Of a stretch of DNA of 64,000 nucleotides, positions 20,142 to 26,692 are shown piece after piece; within the stretch, counting starts at the first letter, position 1; every line of letters begins with the position of its first letter. A program made the translations under genes and the position numbers. The stretch covers positions 1-64,000 of the forward strand of contig SMSO01000007.1 of NCBI GenBank assembly GCA_004764695.1, written 5' to 3'. Under the pieces are notes generated by a model. That model was not told the origin of the DNA. It did no database searches and saw nothing but the letters and a program-made list of their open reading frames with translations. Source of the stretch: Schizochytrium sp. TIO01. Taxonomy: Eukaryota; Protista; Bigyra: Labyrinthulomycetes.

Positions 20142-23100
20142 TCATTCGAAAATGTAAGGGCCCAGCAATCCCAATGATTCACTAAAGGCAACGATTAAAG
20201 CTTCCAATATATCAAGCTCTACTTTCTGCGTAGCAAGAAATTCCTCTTTCGAGCTCTGCTCACCATTACTGCTAGCAAGCAGACTCTGTGCAAAACGACC
20301 GACTTTCACTGAAGATGGCATAGAAAGTGCATTGTTTACAGCATGTATACAACCAAGCTCACGAGAGATCTGCTCAAGACTTGTCCTTCTTGTCTTTGCA
20401 TAATAAATCTCTTCATTCAATTTCAGCTCCCTCTGTCCTTCATGGCTCAATCTTAATCTAAGAATTAGCAGACCAAATAGCATCATCTCCGTTCGTCAGT
20501 TAACAGTTTCACGTCATTTAAAGGTACCCACAGTACTGCCAGTACAGTTTCATTTATTCTCTGATGTTATCATGCTCTCTATTAGATCCACACTCAACCA
20601 AACAAACAATTCCACAACAAATTTGCATTGGCGCGAAGAAAAACATCGACAAAACAACACACTAGACAACCCACGACGCAACCAACCAACCAAGTCTCAT
20701 GCACACAAAAGTCCACGAGCTACTGCTTAGACAACTTACCTGCATAATCTCAGAGACCAGTTCTCTCCCAGCGCCGCAGCCACTGCCTTGGCGCCCTCGT
20801 CGCCGATATTGTTTTCAGAAAGACTGTTGATTTGATTCAATGAGGGCAAGCAATACATTACACGTTATACATTGCATTAGATACATCCATGCATGAATAT
20901 ATGTGAGTGATCTGGGTCGGCTCTCAGGATTTCATCTTTGTTGTGTTGCCCTTTTGCTCTTTGTTCAATATATGCATACTCAGTCAAACAGACAACTTAT
21001 CCATCCATCAAACAAACAACCGATTGCATAAACTTGCTAAATAACACCAACCAAATCAACAAACCAGGGAAGCAAGCATCATGTACAAAAAAACTCCATG
21101 AGCTATGATATTGCTAAGACAACTTACTCTATATCTGTCAGCGACCGGTTCTCTTTCAACGCTGCAGCCACTGCCTCGGCGCCCTCGTAGCCGATTTCGT
21201 TATCTTGAAATCTTTCAATTTGATTGAATGATGGCAAGCAATACATTACACATTTTATTGCATTAGATGCACGCATGCATGCATCAACGTGAGTGATCTT
21301 GGTTGGCTTTCAGGATTAGGTTTTTATTGTGTTGACAATTGGCTCTCTGTTTGGTGGGTGCATACTCAGTCAAACAGACCAATTCATCCGTCCATCAAAC
21401 AAACAAGAGATTGCATAAACTTGCAAAACAACACCGTCCCACCCACCAAACAACAAACCAAGCATCATGTACAAACAAGTCCACGAGCTGCGCTGTTGCG
21501 TAGACAACTTACGATAGTGATGTCAGCGACCGGTTCTCTTTCAGCACCGCAGCCACTGCCATGGCGCCCTCTGAGCCGATCTGGTTTCTAAAAAGACTGT
21601 CGATTTAATTGAATGAGGGCAACCAATACATTACACGTTACATATTACAATAGATGTACGCATGCATGCATGGACGTGAGTGATCTAGGTTGGCTTTCAG
21701 GATATGTTGTTATTTTGCTCTTTGTTCGATGGATGTATACTCACTCAAACAGAGAACTCATCCATCCATCAAACAAACAAGAGATTGCATAAACTTGCAA
21801 AACAACACCGACCCACCCACCAAACAACAAACCAAGCATCATGTACAAACAAGTCCACGAGCTGCGGTGTTGCGTAGACAACTTACGATAGTGATGTCAG
21901 CGACCGGTTCTCTTTCAACGCTGCAGCCACTGCCTTGGCGCCCTCTGAGCCGATCTGGTTGTTATCAAGACTGTCGATTTAATTGAATGATGGCAACCAA
22001 TACATTACACGTTACATATTACAATAGATGTACGCATGCATGCATGAACGTGAGTGATCTAGGTTGGCTTTCAGGATATGTTGTTATTTTGCTCTTTGTT
22101 CGATGGATGTATACTCACTCAAACAGACAACTCATCCATCCATCAAACAAACAAGCGATTGCATAAACTTGCAAAACAACACCGACCCACCCACCAAACA
22201 ACAAACCAAGCATCATGTACAAACAAGTCCACGAGCTGCGGTGTTGCGTAGACAACTTACGATAGTGATGTCAGCGACCGGTTCTCTTTCAGCGCCGCAC
22301 CCACTGCCTTGGCGCCCTCGTCGCCGATATCGGTGCGTTGAAGACTGTCGATTTGATTGAATGATGGCCAGCAATACATTACACGTTACATATTACAATA
22401 GATGCACGCATGCATGCATGGACGTGAGTGATCTAGGTTGACTTTCAGCATTTATGATTTCCTCTTTGTTGTGTTGTCATTTTGCTCTTTGTTCGATAAA
22501 TGTATACTCCCTCAAACAGACAACGTGTCCATCCATCAAACAAACAAGCGATTGCATAAACTTGCAAAACAACACCGACCCACCCACCAAACAACAAACC
22601 AAGCATCGTGTACAAACAAGTCCACGAGCTGCGGTGTTGCGTAGACAACTTACTTGAGTGATGTCAGCGACCGGTTCTCTTTCAGCGCCGCACCCACTGC
22701 CTTGGCGCCCTCGTCGCCGATCTGGTTGTAGGAAAGACTGTCGATTCGATTCAATGATGGCAAGCAATACATTACATGTTACATATTACAATAGATGCAC
22801 GCATGCATGCATGGACGTGAGTGATCTAGGTTGACTTTCAGCATTTATGATTTCCTCTTTGTTGTGTTGTCATTTTGCTCTTTGTTCGATAAATGTATAC
22901 TCCCTCAAACAGACAACGTGTCCATCCATCAAACAAACAAGCGATTGCATAAACTTGCAAAACAACACCGACCCACCCACCAAACAACAAACCAAGCATC
23001 GTGTACAAACAAGTCCACGAGCTGCGGTGTTGCGTAGACAACTTACTTGAGTGATGTCAGCGACCGGTTCTCTTTCAGCGCCGCACCCACTGCCTTGGCG

Positions 23101-26100: not shown

Positions 26101-26692
26101 AGCAAGCAAGCAAGCAAGCAAGCAAGCAAGCAAGCAAGCAAGCAAGCAAGCAAGCAAGCAAGCAAGCAAGCAAGCAAGCAAGCAAGCAAGCAAGCAAGCA
26201 AGCAAGCAAGCAAGCAAGCAAGCAAGCAAGCAAGCAAGCAAGCAAGCAAGCAAGCAAGCAAGCAAGCAAGCAAGCAAGCAAGCAAGCAAGCAAGCAAGCA
26301 AGCAAGCAAGCAAGCAAGCAAGCAAGCAAGCAAGCAAGCAAGCAAGCAAGCAAGCAAGCAAGCAAGCAAGCAAGCAAGCAAGCAAGCAAGCAAGCAAGCA
26401 AGCAAGCAAGCAAGCAAGCAAGCAAGCAAGCAAGCAAGCAAGCAAGCAAGCAAGCAAGCAAGCAAGCAAGCAAGCAAGCAAGCAAGCAAGCAAGCAAGCA
26501 AGCAAGCAAGCAAGCAAGCAAGCAAGCAAGCAAGCAAGCAAGCAAGCAAGCAAGCAAGCAAGCAAGCAAGCAAGCAAGCAAGCAAGCAAGCAAGCAAGCA
26601 AGCAAGCAAGCAAGCGTGTTAACTTACTCTAAAATAGTAGCACCATTCTGAAGCTGTTCAAGGGCAGCGACAACACTTGGGTGGTCCGACAT
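20142..26692 (-). CDS. Ribonuclease-inhibitor/NLRC3-class leucine-rich-repeat protein; 16 exons, one LRR per 84-nt exon; 518 aa predicted
   Basis: Exons in transcription order: 26628-26692 (MSDHPSVVAALEQLQNGATIL), then 25729-25812, 25361-25444, 24972-25055, 24587-24670, 24202-24285, 23817-23900, 23432-23515, 23047-23130, 22654-22737, 22261-22344, 21887-21970, 21513-21596, 21128-21211, 20740-20823 (consensus LxxNxIG[D/S]EGAKAV[G/A]AALKENRSLTSL), and terminal exon 20142-20457. All 15 introns start GTAAGT, end AG and are phase 2. The spliced length is 1557 nt with no internal stop. Confidence 0.9.
20590..26085. repeat. ~385-bp tandem array (368-393 bp units) formed by the exon+intron modules of the LRR gene
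   Basis: The most common unit is an 84-nt exon plus a 301-nt intron; introns range from 282 to 309 nt and are highly similar to each other. Confidence 0.95.
26086..26615. repeat. (GCAA)n microsatellite, about 132 units, within intron 1 of the LRR gene
   Basis: Perfect tetranucleotide run. Confidence 0.98.

What the first reader, a model, noticed from the sequence alone, without database searches (positions are those of the whole stretch)
20142..26692. The ~385-bp rDNA-5S 'spacer satellite' is a hidden one-LRR-per-exon gene
Seen in sequence: on the minus strand each unit reads AG | 84 nt | GTAAGT, and the 84 nt translate to one 28-aa RI-class LRR, e.g. LSYNQIGDEGAKAVGAALKENRSLTSL. All 14 modules are exactly 84 nt and stop-free, while indels fall only in the introns (282-309 nt). 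A 65-nt ATG exon lies beyond the GCAA microsatellite and a 316-nt terminal exon lies at 20142-20457; both join in phase, giving 518 aa. The six-frame ORF track misses the gene entirely. From memory: Aurantiochytrium was reported to have rDNA plus long repeats ('LORE-TEARS') at essentially all chromosome ends, and I recall them being treated as spacers. Inference: if this repeat is one of those, many chromosome ends may carry their own LRR gene variant, forming an unrecognised subtelomeric receptor family.
Basis: partly seen in the sequence, partly recalled or inferred. Interest (0 to 1): 0.97.

Follow-up and report, generated by a model that had tools for sequence, protein, structure and literature searches.

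The report
Subtelomeric spacer repeat is LRR gene
A 385-base repeat published as a non-coding spacer between the ribosomal RNA genes at the chromosome ends of the marine protist Aurantiochytrium is in fact the exon-intron array of an expressed, spliced gene family of leucine-rich-repeat proteins whose likely ligand-contact residues are hypervariable.

Summary
Confirmed. On the minus strand of 20142-26692, the 385-bp array (the published 'Group 0 LORE-TEARS' spacer) is a 16-exon gene. It has a 65-nt ATG exon, 14 exons of exactly 84 nt (one RI-type LRR each, AG|84|GTAAGT) and a 316-nt terminal exon, giving 518 codons in phase.

- **Other copies:** 20 further copies fetched from this genome all give uninterrupted spliced ORFs, with 3-21 LRR exons.
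- **Exon integrity:** of 332 distinct exon cores, 329 are intact and 3 are frameshifted, while intron lengths range from 263 to 338 nt.
- **Selection:** scaffold codons show purifying selection (dN/dS 0.42). Codons at the beta-strand x positions are saturated, about 10 times intron diversity, with 0 stops against 69 expected.
- **RNA evidence:** RNA-like public runs from three studies hold contigs joined exactly at the predicted junctions. One run covers exons only, and a DNA-like run shows none of these joints. MMETSP transcripts carry the C-terminal domain spliced to an LRR exon.
- **Novelty:** I found no annotated full-length protein and no paper describing this gene.

The function, an intracellular variable binding protein, is inferred and not shown. 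This scan already reached the same reading on other DNA of this genome (s1-824447, s1-834053). The joined protein was sent to no search or fold tool.

The parts
26628..26692 (-). Exon 1: ATG plus 65 nt (21 codons + 2 nt), followed by a GTAAGT donor
   Evidence: The exon is 65 nt in all 21 copies, while the sequence upstream of the ATG differs in frame between copies. RNA-like contigs join exon-1 sequence directly to an LRR exon (loose ends; a 0-mismatch match to the L043 exon 1).
25813..26627 (-). Intron 1 (815 nt), containing (GCAA)132 at 26086-26615 and (ATCC)n at 25987-26017
   Evidence: Intron 1 length is 185-879 nt across copies.
25729..25812 (-). LRR exon 1 (84 nt)
   Evidence: Pfam LRR_6 E 7.9e-5
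25361..25444 (-). LRR exon 2 (84 nt)
   Evidence: The cognate joint 25055->25361 (skips 305, CT..AC on the + strand) is seen in run X1.
24972..25055 (-). LRR exon 3 (84 nt)
24587..24670 (-). LRR exon 4 (84 nt)
   Evidence: joints end at 24587
24202..24285 (-). LRR exon 5 (84 nt)
   Evidence: joint starts at 24285
23817..23900 (-). LRR exon 6 (84 nt)
   Evidence: Pfam LRR_6 E 1.1e-5, 25.5 bits, above the 23.4-bit cut-off
23432..23515 (-). LRR exon 7 (84 nt)
   Evidence: joint starts at 23515
23047..23130 (-). LRR exon 8 (84 nt; identical to exons 6 and 9)
22654..22737 (-). LRR exon 9 (84 nt)
22261..22344 (-). LRR exon 10 (84 nt)
21887..21970 (-). LRR exon 11 (84 nt)
21513..21596 (-). LRR exon 12 (84 nt)
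21128..21211 (-). LRR exon 13 (84 nt, divergent)
20740..20823 (-). LRR exon 14 (84 nt, divergent last repeat)
   Evidence: Pfam LRR_6 E 2.9e-4; a CT..AC joint starts at 20823
20142..20457 (-). Terminal exon (316 nt): a 104-aa C-terminal helical domain plus a TGA stop
   Evidence: A joint at 20457 links it to an LRR exon end in X1. It is conserved at 42-99% identity in other copies and in MMETSP transcripts. AF2 predicts two long helices.
27163..27281 (+). 5S rRNA gene, divergent neighbour about 470 nt upstream of the ATG
   Evidence: The same spacing and orientation are seen in all 11 other-copy flanks that reach the 5S gene.

Best explanation
The 385-bp array is one member of a large subtelomeric family of Pol II-type protein-coding genes. 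Each repeat unit is one 84-nt exon, encoding one 28-residue ribonuclease-inhibitor-type LRR, plus one intron of about 300 nt. Because every exon starts and ends in the same phase (a split codon of 2 + 1 nt), unit duplication, deletion or exchange between chromosome ends changes the number and order of LRRs without breaking the frame. The product has no signal peptide or membrane segment by eye. It consists of a 21-residue N-terminus, 3-21 LRRs forming an RI/NLR-like solenoid, and a roughly 104-residue C-terminal domain of two long helices that matches no known family. SHOWN: the structure; its conservation in 21 copies; purifying selection on the scaffold codons; saturated diversity with strict stop-avoidance at the beta-strand x positions (split codon 28 and codons 2, 3, 5, plus D/S at codon 8 and A/G at codon 15); and splicing at the predicted junctions. 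INFERRED: the proteins are intracellular binding modules with a diversified concave face, that is, a recognition repertoire that may face viruses or other variable ligands (about 40% likely). Also inferred is that the subtelomeric position next to the rDNA drives the cassette exchange that diversifies them.
For: Structure: 14 modules of AG|84|GTAAGT, in phase, 518 codons.
Family: 21 of 21 copies have uninterrupted spliced ORFs of 215-718 aa. Of 332 distinct exon cores, 326 are canonical, 2 have other GT donors, 1 has a GC donor and 3 are frameshifted. Intron lengths are 263-338 nt and only 36% are modal; the exon versus intron length-change contrast has P about 1e-36.
Selection: intron pi is 0.087. 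Scaffold codons give dS 0.11 and dN 0.046. Hypervariable codons give dN about 1.06. There are 0 stops against 69 +/- 6 expected.
RNA: run X7 has zero or near-zero depth in intron-only bins and tens to thousands in exon bins, while DNA-like X19 covers the introns heavily. CT..AC joints fall exactly at exon boundaries (25055->25361, 24285->25361, 23515->24587, 20823->25729, and 20457 joined to an LRR exon end) in X1, X5 and X7, and none of the listed joints occur in X19. Loose ends show exon 1 joined to an LRR exon.
Independent transcripts: MMETSP ORFs carry the C-terminal domain, and P0003 has the last LRR exon spliced to it.
Fold class: Pfam LRR_6 matches single exons. The sister-family transcript P0002 folds as an LRR solenoid plus two helices (pLDDT 81) and matches NOD2, NLRP1-LRR and ribonuclease inhibitor.
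Against: The RNA runs are only guessed to be RNA and are available as contigs, not reads. Sides of the joints are 20-38 nt, so partner exons and the exact paralogue are ambiguous, and only one listed joint is the cognate adjacent pair of this window. No full-length transcript and no peptide evidence was obtained. Two of the 21 copies have truncated terminal exons (L043, L047), and one partial array (L004) has two frameshifted exons, so some members are pseudogenes. There is no signalling or effector domain, and no ligand is known. Scaffold dS is similar to intron diversity, and both are shaped by concerted evolution, so dN/dS values are approximate. The joined protein itself was never searched or folded.
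Confidence: 0.88

Rival explanations
1. The array is what the literature calls it: a non-coding spacer satellite involved in chromosome-end or rDNA maintenance. On this view the LRR-like reading is coincidence or a dead relic.
For: It occupies a fixed position between the 18S and 5S genes at nearly all chromosome ends and is homogenised among ends. G-quadruplexes and end-maintenance roles were proposed in the paper.
Against: A relic would accumulate stops and frameshifts, yet 329 of 332 exons are intact while the introns are riddled with indels. There are 0 stops at saturated codons against 69 expected. Spliced joints appear in RNA-like runs only, and MMETSP transcripts exist. A DNA-level role may coexist with coding but cannot explain these patterns.
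Confidence: 0.02
2. This is a real, translated gene family whose proteins have a conserved non-recognition role. Examples would be an RNase-inhibitor-like, RanGAP-like or axoneme/cytoskeleton-associated LRR scaffold. The surface variability would then be a by-product of relaxed constraint combined with unit turnover, not selection for diverse ligands.
For: No signalling domain is present. Structural neighbours of the sister protein include ribonuclease inhibitor, tropomodulin and axonemal LRR proteins as well as NLRs. Generic RI-LRR hits are named RanGAP-like by some sources. The scaffold is highly conserved.
Against: Diversity at the x positions is about 10 times that of the introns in the same units. 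Neutral relaxation cannot produce this inside units that are being homogenised, so diversity must be selectively retained or specifically generated. The variable positions are exactly the beta-strand x positions that contact ligands in characterised LRR proteins (established knowledge; also for Ectocarpus).
Confidence: 0.25
3. The family is transcribed and spliced, but expression is restricted or silenced (subtelomeric position effect). Only one or a few copies would then make protein at a time, or the RNAs themselves would be the functional product.
For: The location is subtelomeric. Unspliced pieces are also present in the RNA-like runs (for example the X7 record spanning 20445-20761 at low depth). 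No peptide data exist.
Against: Protein-level constraints (frame, stop avoidance, dN/dS 0.42 on the scaffold) hold across at least 21 copies, which requires translation of most copies over evolutionary time. Junction contigs match several different paralogues.
Confidence: 0.15

Closest known systems
'Group 0' LORE-TEARS of Aurantiochytrium limacinum (bioRxiv 10.1101/2023.06.15.545109; published as Collier et al. 2023, Curr Biol, not held here)
   Same: [quoted passage not shown]
   Different: [quoted passage not shown] Here it is read as the exon-intron array of an expressed protein-coding gene.
Ectocarpus LRR-ROCO candidate pathogen receptors (PMC3341825; PMC11378527)
   Same: Both are in stramenopiles. 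Each LRR is encoded by a single exon of constant length with compatible phases. Both show exon shuffling or duplication and positive selection on solvent-exposed concave-face residues.
   Different: The Ectocarpus exons are 72 nt (24 aa, a different LRR class) and are fused to a ROC-COR GTPase. Here the exons are 84 nt, of RI type, with no GTPase or other signalling domain, a novel helical C-terminus, a near-identical intron in each unit (a true tandem satellite), and a fixed position inside subtelomeric rDNA units.
RI/NLR-type LRR domains (ribonuclease inhibitor, NOD2, NLRP1)
   Same: The repeats are 28 residues with the L-x-x-L-x-L-x-x-N-x-I-G-x-x-G motif, Pfam LRR_6 matches, and the sister-family protein has structural matches. 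From memory, exon-per-repeat organisation with phase-compatible introns is known for RNH1 and NLR genes.
   Different: There is no NACHT or NB-ARC domain. The repeats are all of one 28-residue type, not alternating A/B types. Copies are massively multiplied at chromosome ends.
Subtelomeric contingency gene families (Plasmodium var, Trypanosoma VSG, Pneumocystis MSG); comparison from memory
   Same: A large hypervariable family located at chromosome ends, where ectopic recombination can shuffle cassettes.
   Different: Those families encode surface antigens of parasites used for immune evasion. These are apparently intracellular LRR proteins of a free-living osmotroph, so they would be candidate receptors and not antigens. 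Mutually exclusive expression was not tested.
Lamprey variable lymphocyte receptors; comparison from memory
   Same: Diversity is concentrated in concave-face residues of LRR cassettes with a conserved scaffold.
   Different: VLRs are assembled somatically from non-coding-flanked cassettes and are secreted or GPI-anchored. Here each germline copy is already a complete spliced gene, and the DNA-like run showed no listed joined forms.

Membership tests
RI-type (ribonuclease-inhibitor-like) LRR proteins, Pfam LRR_6 | Repeat length of 28-29 residues with the consensus L-x-x-L-x-L-x-x-N-x-(L/I)-x-x-x-G-x-x-x-L-x-x-x-L | tested here: met
   All 14 window exons and 329 of 332 family exons encode 28 residues fitting this pattern.
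RI-type (ribonuclease-inhibitor-like) LRR proteins, Pfam LRR_6 | Significant match to the LRR_6 profile | tested here: met
   Single exons by reference gave E 1.1e-5 (25.5 bits, cut-off 23.4), 7.9e-5 and 2.9e-4. Only profile positions 10-24 match, because the intron splits the repeat. The joined protein was not searched.
RI-type (ribonuclease-inhibitor-like) LRR proteins, Pfam LRR_6 | Beta-strand/alpha-helix solenoid fold | tested here: inconclusive
   The fold is shown only for the sister-family transcript product P0002 (pLDDT 81; matches NOD2, NLRP1-LRR and RNH1). The window's joined protein was not folded.
NLR (NACHT/NB-ARC-LRR) immune receptors | A central NACHT or NB-ARC NTPase domain | tested here: not met
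   The model has 21 residues before the first LRR. The 5S gene lies 470 nt upstream of the ATG. The terminal exon has no Pfam match.
Ectocarpus-type LRR-ROCO receptors | One LRR per constant-length, phase-compatible exon | tested here: met
   the definition comes.
Ectocarpus-type LRR-ROCO receptors | A ROC-COR GTPase domain | tested here: not met
   No such exon lies between the ATG and the stop; the C-terminal domain is a helical hairpin with no family match.
Subtelomeric hypervariable (contingency) gene families | Multi-copy, located at chromosome ends, with variation concentrated in the functional surface | tested here: met
   The telomere is at window 1-406 and the gene at 20-27 kb. There are about 72 terminal exons genome-wide. 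Diversity is concentrated in codons 28, 2, 3, 5 and 8.
Subtelomeric hypervariable (contingency) gene families | Switching or mutually exclusive expression | not testable with these tools
   Only contigs of public runs were available.
VLR-like somatically assembled LRR receptors | Somatic DNA rearrangement that assembles the cassettes | tested here: inconclusive
   None of the listed joined forms occurs in DNA-like run X19. However, contigs drop rare variants.

The most novel reading that the evidence does not exclude
Every chromosome end of Aurantiochytrium carries, wedged between its Pol I rDNA unit and a 5S gene, one or more members of a germline-encoded, cassette-shuffling repertoire of intracellular LRR recognition proteins. 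There would be well over 70 genes. The universal subtelomeric rDNA architecture would then double as a diversity generator for an innate immune-like system, possibly directed at the persistent mirusviruses of this host.
Probability: 0.35. Interest if true: 0.92.

Novelty: new variant of a known kind. Interest (0 to 1): 0.82.

Why it matters
The finding changes the reading of a headline feature of a telomere-to-telomere protist genome. The 'spacer' repeats at all chromosome ends are, at least for this class, genes.

It also adds a large, previously undescribed hypervariable LRR family to a lineage (the labyrinthulomycetes) with no characterised immune receptors. That lineage is now a laboratory model for persistent mirusvirus infection.

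It gives a very clean natural example of how phase-compatible one-repeat exons inside a tandem satellite allow a binding surface to be lengthened, shortened and reshuffled without breaking the frame.

Finally, it shows that prokaryote-style or homology-based annotation can miss a family of about 70 or more genes entirely.

Tried and rejected
- **Homodimer test:** Complex prediction on two copies of the C-terminal domain returned 'no answer' (score 0.00). This is evidence neither for nor against binding.
- **Foldseek on the C-terminal model alone:** no match against the PDB.
- **ESM Atlas look-alikes of the C-terminal domain:** only unspecific helical-repeat clusters, below the recognition mark.
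- **Pfam on the terminal exon:** nothing significant.
- **Second batch of genome fetches:** Only 21 full-length copies plus about 30 partial arrays were analysed, not all of the roughly 72.
- **Published Curr Biol version of the genome paper:** not held. I could not check whether its figures or supplements mention gene models inside the repeat.
- **Other papers:** the 2025 proteome and mirusvirus papers on this organism do not mention LRR or LORE-TEARS. A search for thraustochytrid + leucine-rich repeat + subtelomer found no paper.
- **Plus-strand ORFs of 60-123 aa in the array:** rejected. They use bacterial alternative starts, vary in length between units, and are the antisense of the GC-rich exon.
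- **Fuzzy-regex script:** timed out and was replaced by BLAST. The one 'double' gap in L031 proved to hold an intact exon with a GTAAGC donor.
- **Joined protein:** the joined (spliced) protein was deliberately not sent to Pfam, homology, structure or atlas tools, because it has no reference. Joining was done only inside scripts, to count stops and lengths.
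Full report
**1. The observation**

TRF reports a 385-bp period with 13.7 copies at 90% match, at 20724-25997. Next to it lies a perfect (GCAA)132 at 26086-26615. I read the minus strand and scanned every GTAAGT. This gave 14 modules in which AG is followed by exactly 84 nt and then GTAAGT.

The exons are 25729-25812, 25361-25444, 24972-25055, 24587-24670, 24202-24285, 23817-23900, 23432-23515, 23047-23130, 22654-22737, 22261-22344, 21887-21970, 21513-21596, 21128-21211 and 20740-20823. 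Each exon begins with the third base of a split codon and ends with the first two bases of the next one. The 27 whole codons in between are stop-free and read L-x-x-N-x-I-G-(D/S)-E-G-A-K-A-V-(A/G)-A-A-L-K-E-N-R-S-L-T-S-L.

A 65-nt exon starting with ATG (26628-26692) ends in the same GTAAGT donor. A 316-nt terminal exon (20142-20457) follows a TTCTTAG acceptor. When joined in a script, the model is 518 codons with no internal stop. Introns between LRR exons are 284-309 nt, the last intron is 282 nt, and intron 1 is 815 nt and contains the microsatellite. The mechanical six-frame ORF list shows only the terminal exon and repeat-derived ORFs.

**2. Context**

Rfam places 28S, 5.8S and 18S on the minus strand at 11345-16866, and a 5S gene on the plus strand at 27163-27281. 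The window starts with telomere repeats (1-406), followed by a 371-bp array, a 407-bp array and a 411-bp array.

This is the layout that the Aurantiochytrium limacinum telomere-to-telomere paper describes. Its 'Group 0' LORE-TEARS are about 9 units of about 385 bp between the 18S and the nearest 5S gene. They are said to lack similarity to GenBank sequences and are discussed as spacers possibly involved in end maintenance (bioRxiv 10.1101/2023.06.15.545109). The gene is transcribed toward the telomere, like the rDNA unit, and lies head-to-head with the 5S gene about 470 nt upstream of its ATG. The same pairing is seen in every one of the 11 other copies whose fetched flank reaches the 5S gene.

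**3. The family**

- **Copy number.** The window's own genome has at least 396 unit matches. It has at least 40 matches each for the exon-1 region and the terminal exon (both lists are capped). A protein search finds about 72 terminal exons of this type, 70 of them open. Some are duplicates on small contigs.
- **Full-length copies.** All 21 copies have a 65-nt ATG exon, 3-21 LRR exons of 84 nt and an in-phase terminal exon. They give uninterrupted ORFs of 215-718 aa. The single apparent gap, in L031, is an intact exon with a GTAAGC donor. Two copies have truncated terminal exons (L043, L047).
- **Exon census.** I ran a census that finds exon cores by a conserved 16-mer with up to four mismatches and so does not presuppose splice sites. 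It found 332 distinct exons. Of these, 326 are AG|84|GTAAGT and stop-free, 2 have other GT donors, 1 has a GC donor, and 3 carry 1-nt indels (two in L004, one in L012).
- **Intron lengths.** Intron lengths span 263-338 nt in 49 length classes, and only 36% are at the mode. At the intron indel rate, about 83 exons should have changed length. Three did (P about 1e-36).

**4. Selection**

- **Exon diversity is bimodal.** In an alignment of 220 distinct units, mean nucleotide diversity is 0.087 in the introns.
- **Scaffold codons.** The 22 scaffold codons give dS 0.11 and dN 0.046, a dN/dS of 0.42.
- **Hypervariable codons.** Codons 2, 3, 5 and 8 give dN about 1.06, which is saturated and roughly ten times the neutral proxies. 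Codon 15 is an Ala/Gly dimorphism. The split codon between exons is also hypervariable (N, D, S, Y, V and others).
- **Stop avoidance.** No stop occurs at the hypervariable codons, against 69 +/- 6 expected when bases are shuffled within columns.
- **Position in the repeat.** In the canonical motif L-x-x-L-x-L-x-x-N-x-L, the variable residues are x5, x7, x8 and x10. These are the beta-strand positions that face the concave, ligand-binding surface in characterised LRR proteins (established knowledge; the same argument is made for Ectocarpus).
- **Conclusion.** These codons are far more diverse than the introns inside units that are otherwise homogenised. Diversity at these codons must therefore be selectively retained or specifically generated.

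**5. Expression and splicing**

None is on record as RNA, and 18 are guessed to be RNA. I laid contigs of X1, X5 and X7 (three studies) and of the DNA-like run X19 on 20100-26050.

- **Coverage.** In X7 the intron-only bins have depth 0-14 (20896-21094, 21294-21492, 25075-25273, 25473-25671 and 25871-26050 are all 0), while exon-containing bins reach 18-4226. In X19 the same intron bins have 1000-32000. The exon-only pattern is therefore not a mapping artefact.
- **Joints.** Joints whose skipped part begins CT and ends AC on the plus strand (GT..AG on the minus strand) fall exactly on predicted boundaries. They are 25055->25361 (the cognate intron between LRR exons 2 and 3), 24285->25361, 23515->24587 and 20823->25729. 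In addition, 20457 (the terminal-exon acceptor) is joined to the end of an LRR exon. Other joints differ only in that the hypervariable bases of a paralogue sit between the two sides. None of the listed joints has a contig in X19.
- **Intron 1.** Loose ends behind LRR-exon starts read, in reverse complement, the 3' end of exon 1. One matches the exon 1 of copy L043 at 30 of 30 bases. So intron 1 is also removed.
- **Caveats.** These are contigs, not reads. The sides are 20-38 nt. Repeats make partner assignment ambiguous, and unspliced pieces are also present.

Independent support comes from MMETSP transcriptomes. A HMMER scan of 1.84 billion representatives with the terminal exon found only two clusters, and both are MMETSP ORFs. 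P0003 contains an intron tail, a last LRR exon and the C-terminal domain in one frame, which means the last intron was spliced.

**6. The protein**

Single exons, given by reference, match Pfam LRR_6. The best is E 1.1e-5, above the gathering score, over profile positions 10-24, as expected if the intron splits the repeat. The terminal exon has no family match. AlphaFold2 on an alignment of 16 terminal exons predicts two long helices (residues 5-45 and 66-103; pLDDT 71.5). There was no Foldseek match and no useful Atlas neighbour.

P0002 is a 250-aa MMETSP product of a sister family with the same C-terminal domain (42-46% identity). It folds as a beta/alpha LRR solenoid followed by two long helices (pLDDT 81, pTM 0.73). 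It matches NOD2, NLRP1-LRR, ribonuclease inhibitor, tropomodulin and axonemal LRR proteins. A homodimer test of the C-terminal domain gave no verdict.

**7. Interpretation**

The gene is real, and the family is under protein-level selection; I put this at about 0.9. The mechanism I think most likely has two parts.

- **How diversity arises.** The unit (exon plus intron) is a phase-neutral cassette. Unequal exchange and gene conversion within and between chromosome ends vary the number of cassettes (3-21) and their order. In the 21 copies, 30 exon sequences recur: 11 within one gene and 21 between genes. Selection keeps the scaffold and diversifies the concave face.
- **What the product does.** It is probably intracellular, since I see no signal peptide or hydrophobic segment in exon 1 or the terminal exon. 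It probably acts as a variable binding module, with the helical C-terminus as the constant part for partner binding or oligomerisation.

That this is an immune-like recognition repertoire is inference (about 0.4). A conserved non-immune role with tolerated surface variation is the main rival.

**8. Comparison and novelty**

The closest described architecture is the Ectocarpus LRR-ROCO family. It has one 72-nt exon per LRR, exon shuffling, and positive selection on concave-face residues (PMC3341825; also PMC11378527). The present family differs in several ways:

- the LRR class (RI-type, 84 nt);
- the lack of any GTPase or NACHT domain;
- a novel C-terminus;
- organisation as a true tandem satellite;
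- a fixed position inside universal subtelomeric rDNA units, next to a 5S gene.

No annotated full-length protein of 137-437 aa with this C-terminus exists in the 5.8-billion-protein collection. It holds only MMETSP fragments and generic RI-LRR proteins, and only the 8000 candidates sharing most words were scored. No held paper links these repeats with LRRs. The published journal version of the genome paper and the JGI gene catalogue could not be checked.

Within this scan, the same reading was already reached on other DNA of the same genome: first-reader note s1-834053, and note s1-824447 with a follow-up agent. My analysis agrees with these independently.

Noticed in passing
L054:274-1839 and L056:266-1839 (G000:C31:5690076-5693414; C30:13625-16963): A sister family of about 18 copies, also near contig ends. 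It has 84-nt LRR exons with GTGAGT donors and short introns of 120-230 nt, and it ends in the same C-terminal domain (42-46% identity to the window's). MMETSP transcript P0002 matches it exon by exon at 82-100% identity, so it is spliced as predicted.
   Followed up: partly
window 26693-27281, and the same flank in L031, L034, L036, L040, L042, L045, L047-L050: The 5S rRNA gene always lies about 470 nt upstream of the LRR gene's ATG, on the opposite strand. This is a conserved head-to-head Pol III / Pol II pair with a shared intergenic region.
   Followed up: partly
window 26086-26615: A perfect (GCAA)132 microsatellite sits inside intron 1. Intron 1 ranges from 185 to 879 nt among copies, so the microsatellite is copy-specific.
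   Followed up: partly
codons 8 and 15 of every LRR exon, e.g. window 23817-23900: Codon 8 is a clean dimorphism, Asp (GAC) versus Ser (TCA), differing at all three bases (108 versus 104 of 222 exons). Codon 15 is Ala versus Gly. This suggests two old exon lineages that are kept mixed within genes.
   Followed up: no
window 26843-26848, and the same place in other copies: A second conserved GTAAGT lies 137 nt (127-141 in other copies) upstream of the exon-1 donor, with a possible CAG acceptor just before the ATG exon. It may mark a 5'-UTR intron.
   Followed up: no
window 1393-5415, 5415-6456, 8720-10347: The other LORE-TEARS-like arrays of the window (periods 371, 407 and 411 bp) were not examined for exon-like constant-length segments.
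   Followed up: no
G000 contigs, e.g. C30:5478300-5484200 (+) and C30:5516200-5522000 (-): Near-identical gene copies lie in inverted pairs about 35 kb apart deep inside very long contigs. There are also identical copies on small contigs (for example C10 versus C30, C29 versus C6, C27 versus C13). The assembly seems to join chromosome ends or to carry redundant end contigs, so copy counts are upper bounds.
   Followed up: no
L004 (G000:C29:15580-18503), L012, L043, L047: There are a few decaying members. L004 has two frameshifted LRR exons and L012 has one. L043 and L047 have terminal exons truncated to 81 and 85 aa.
   Followed up: partly
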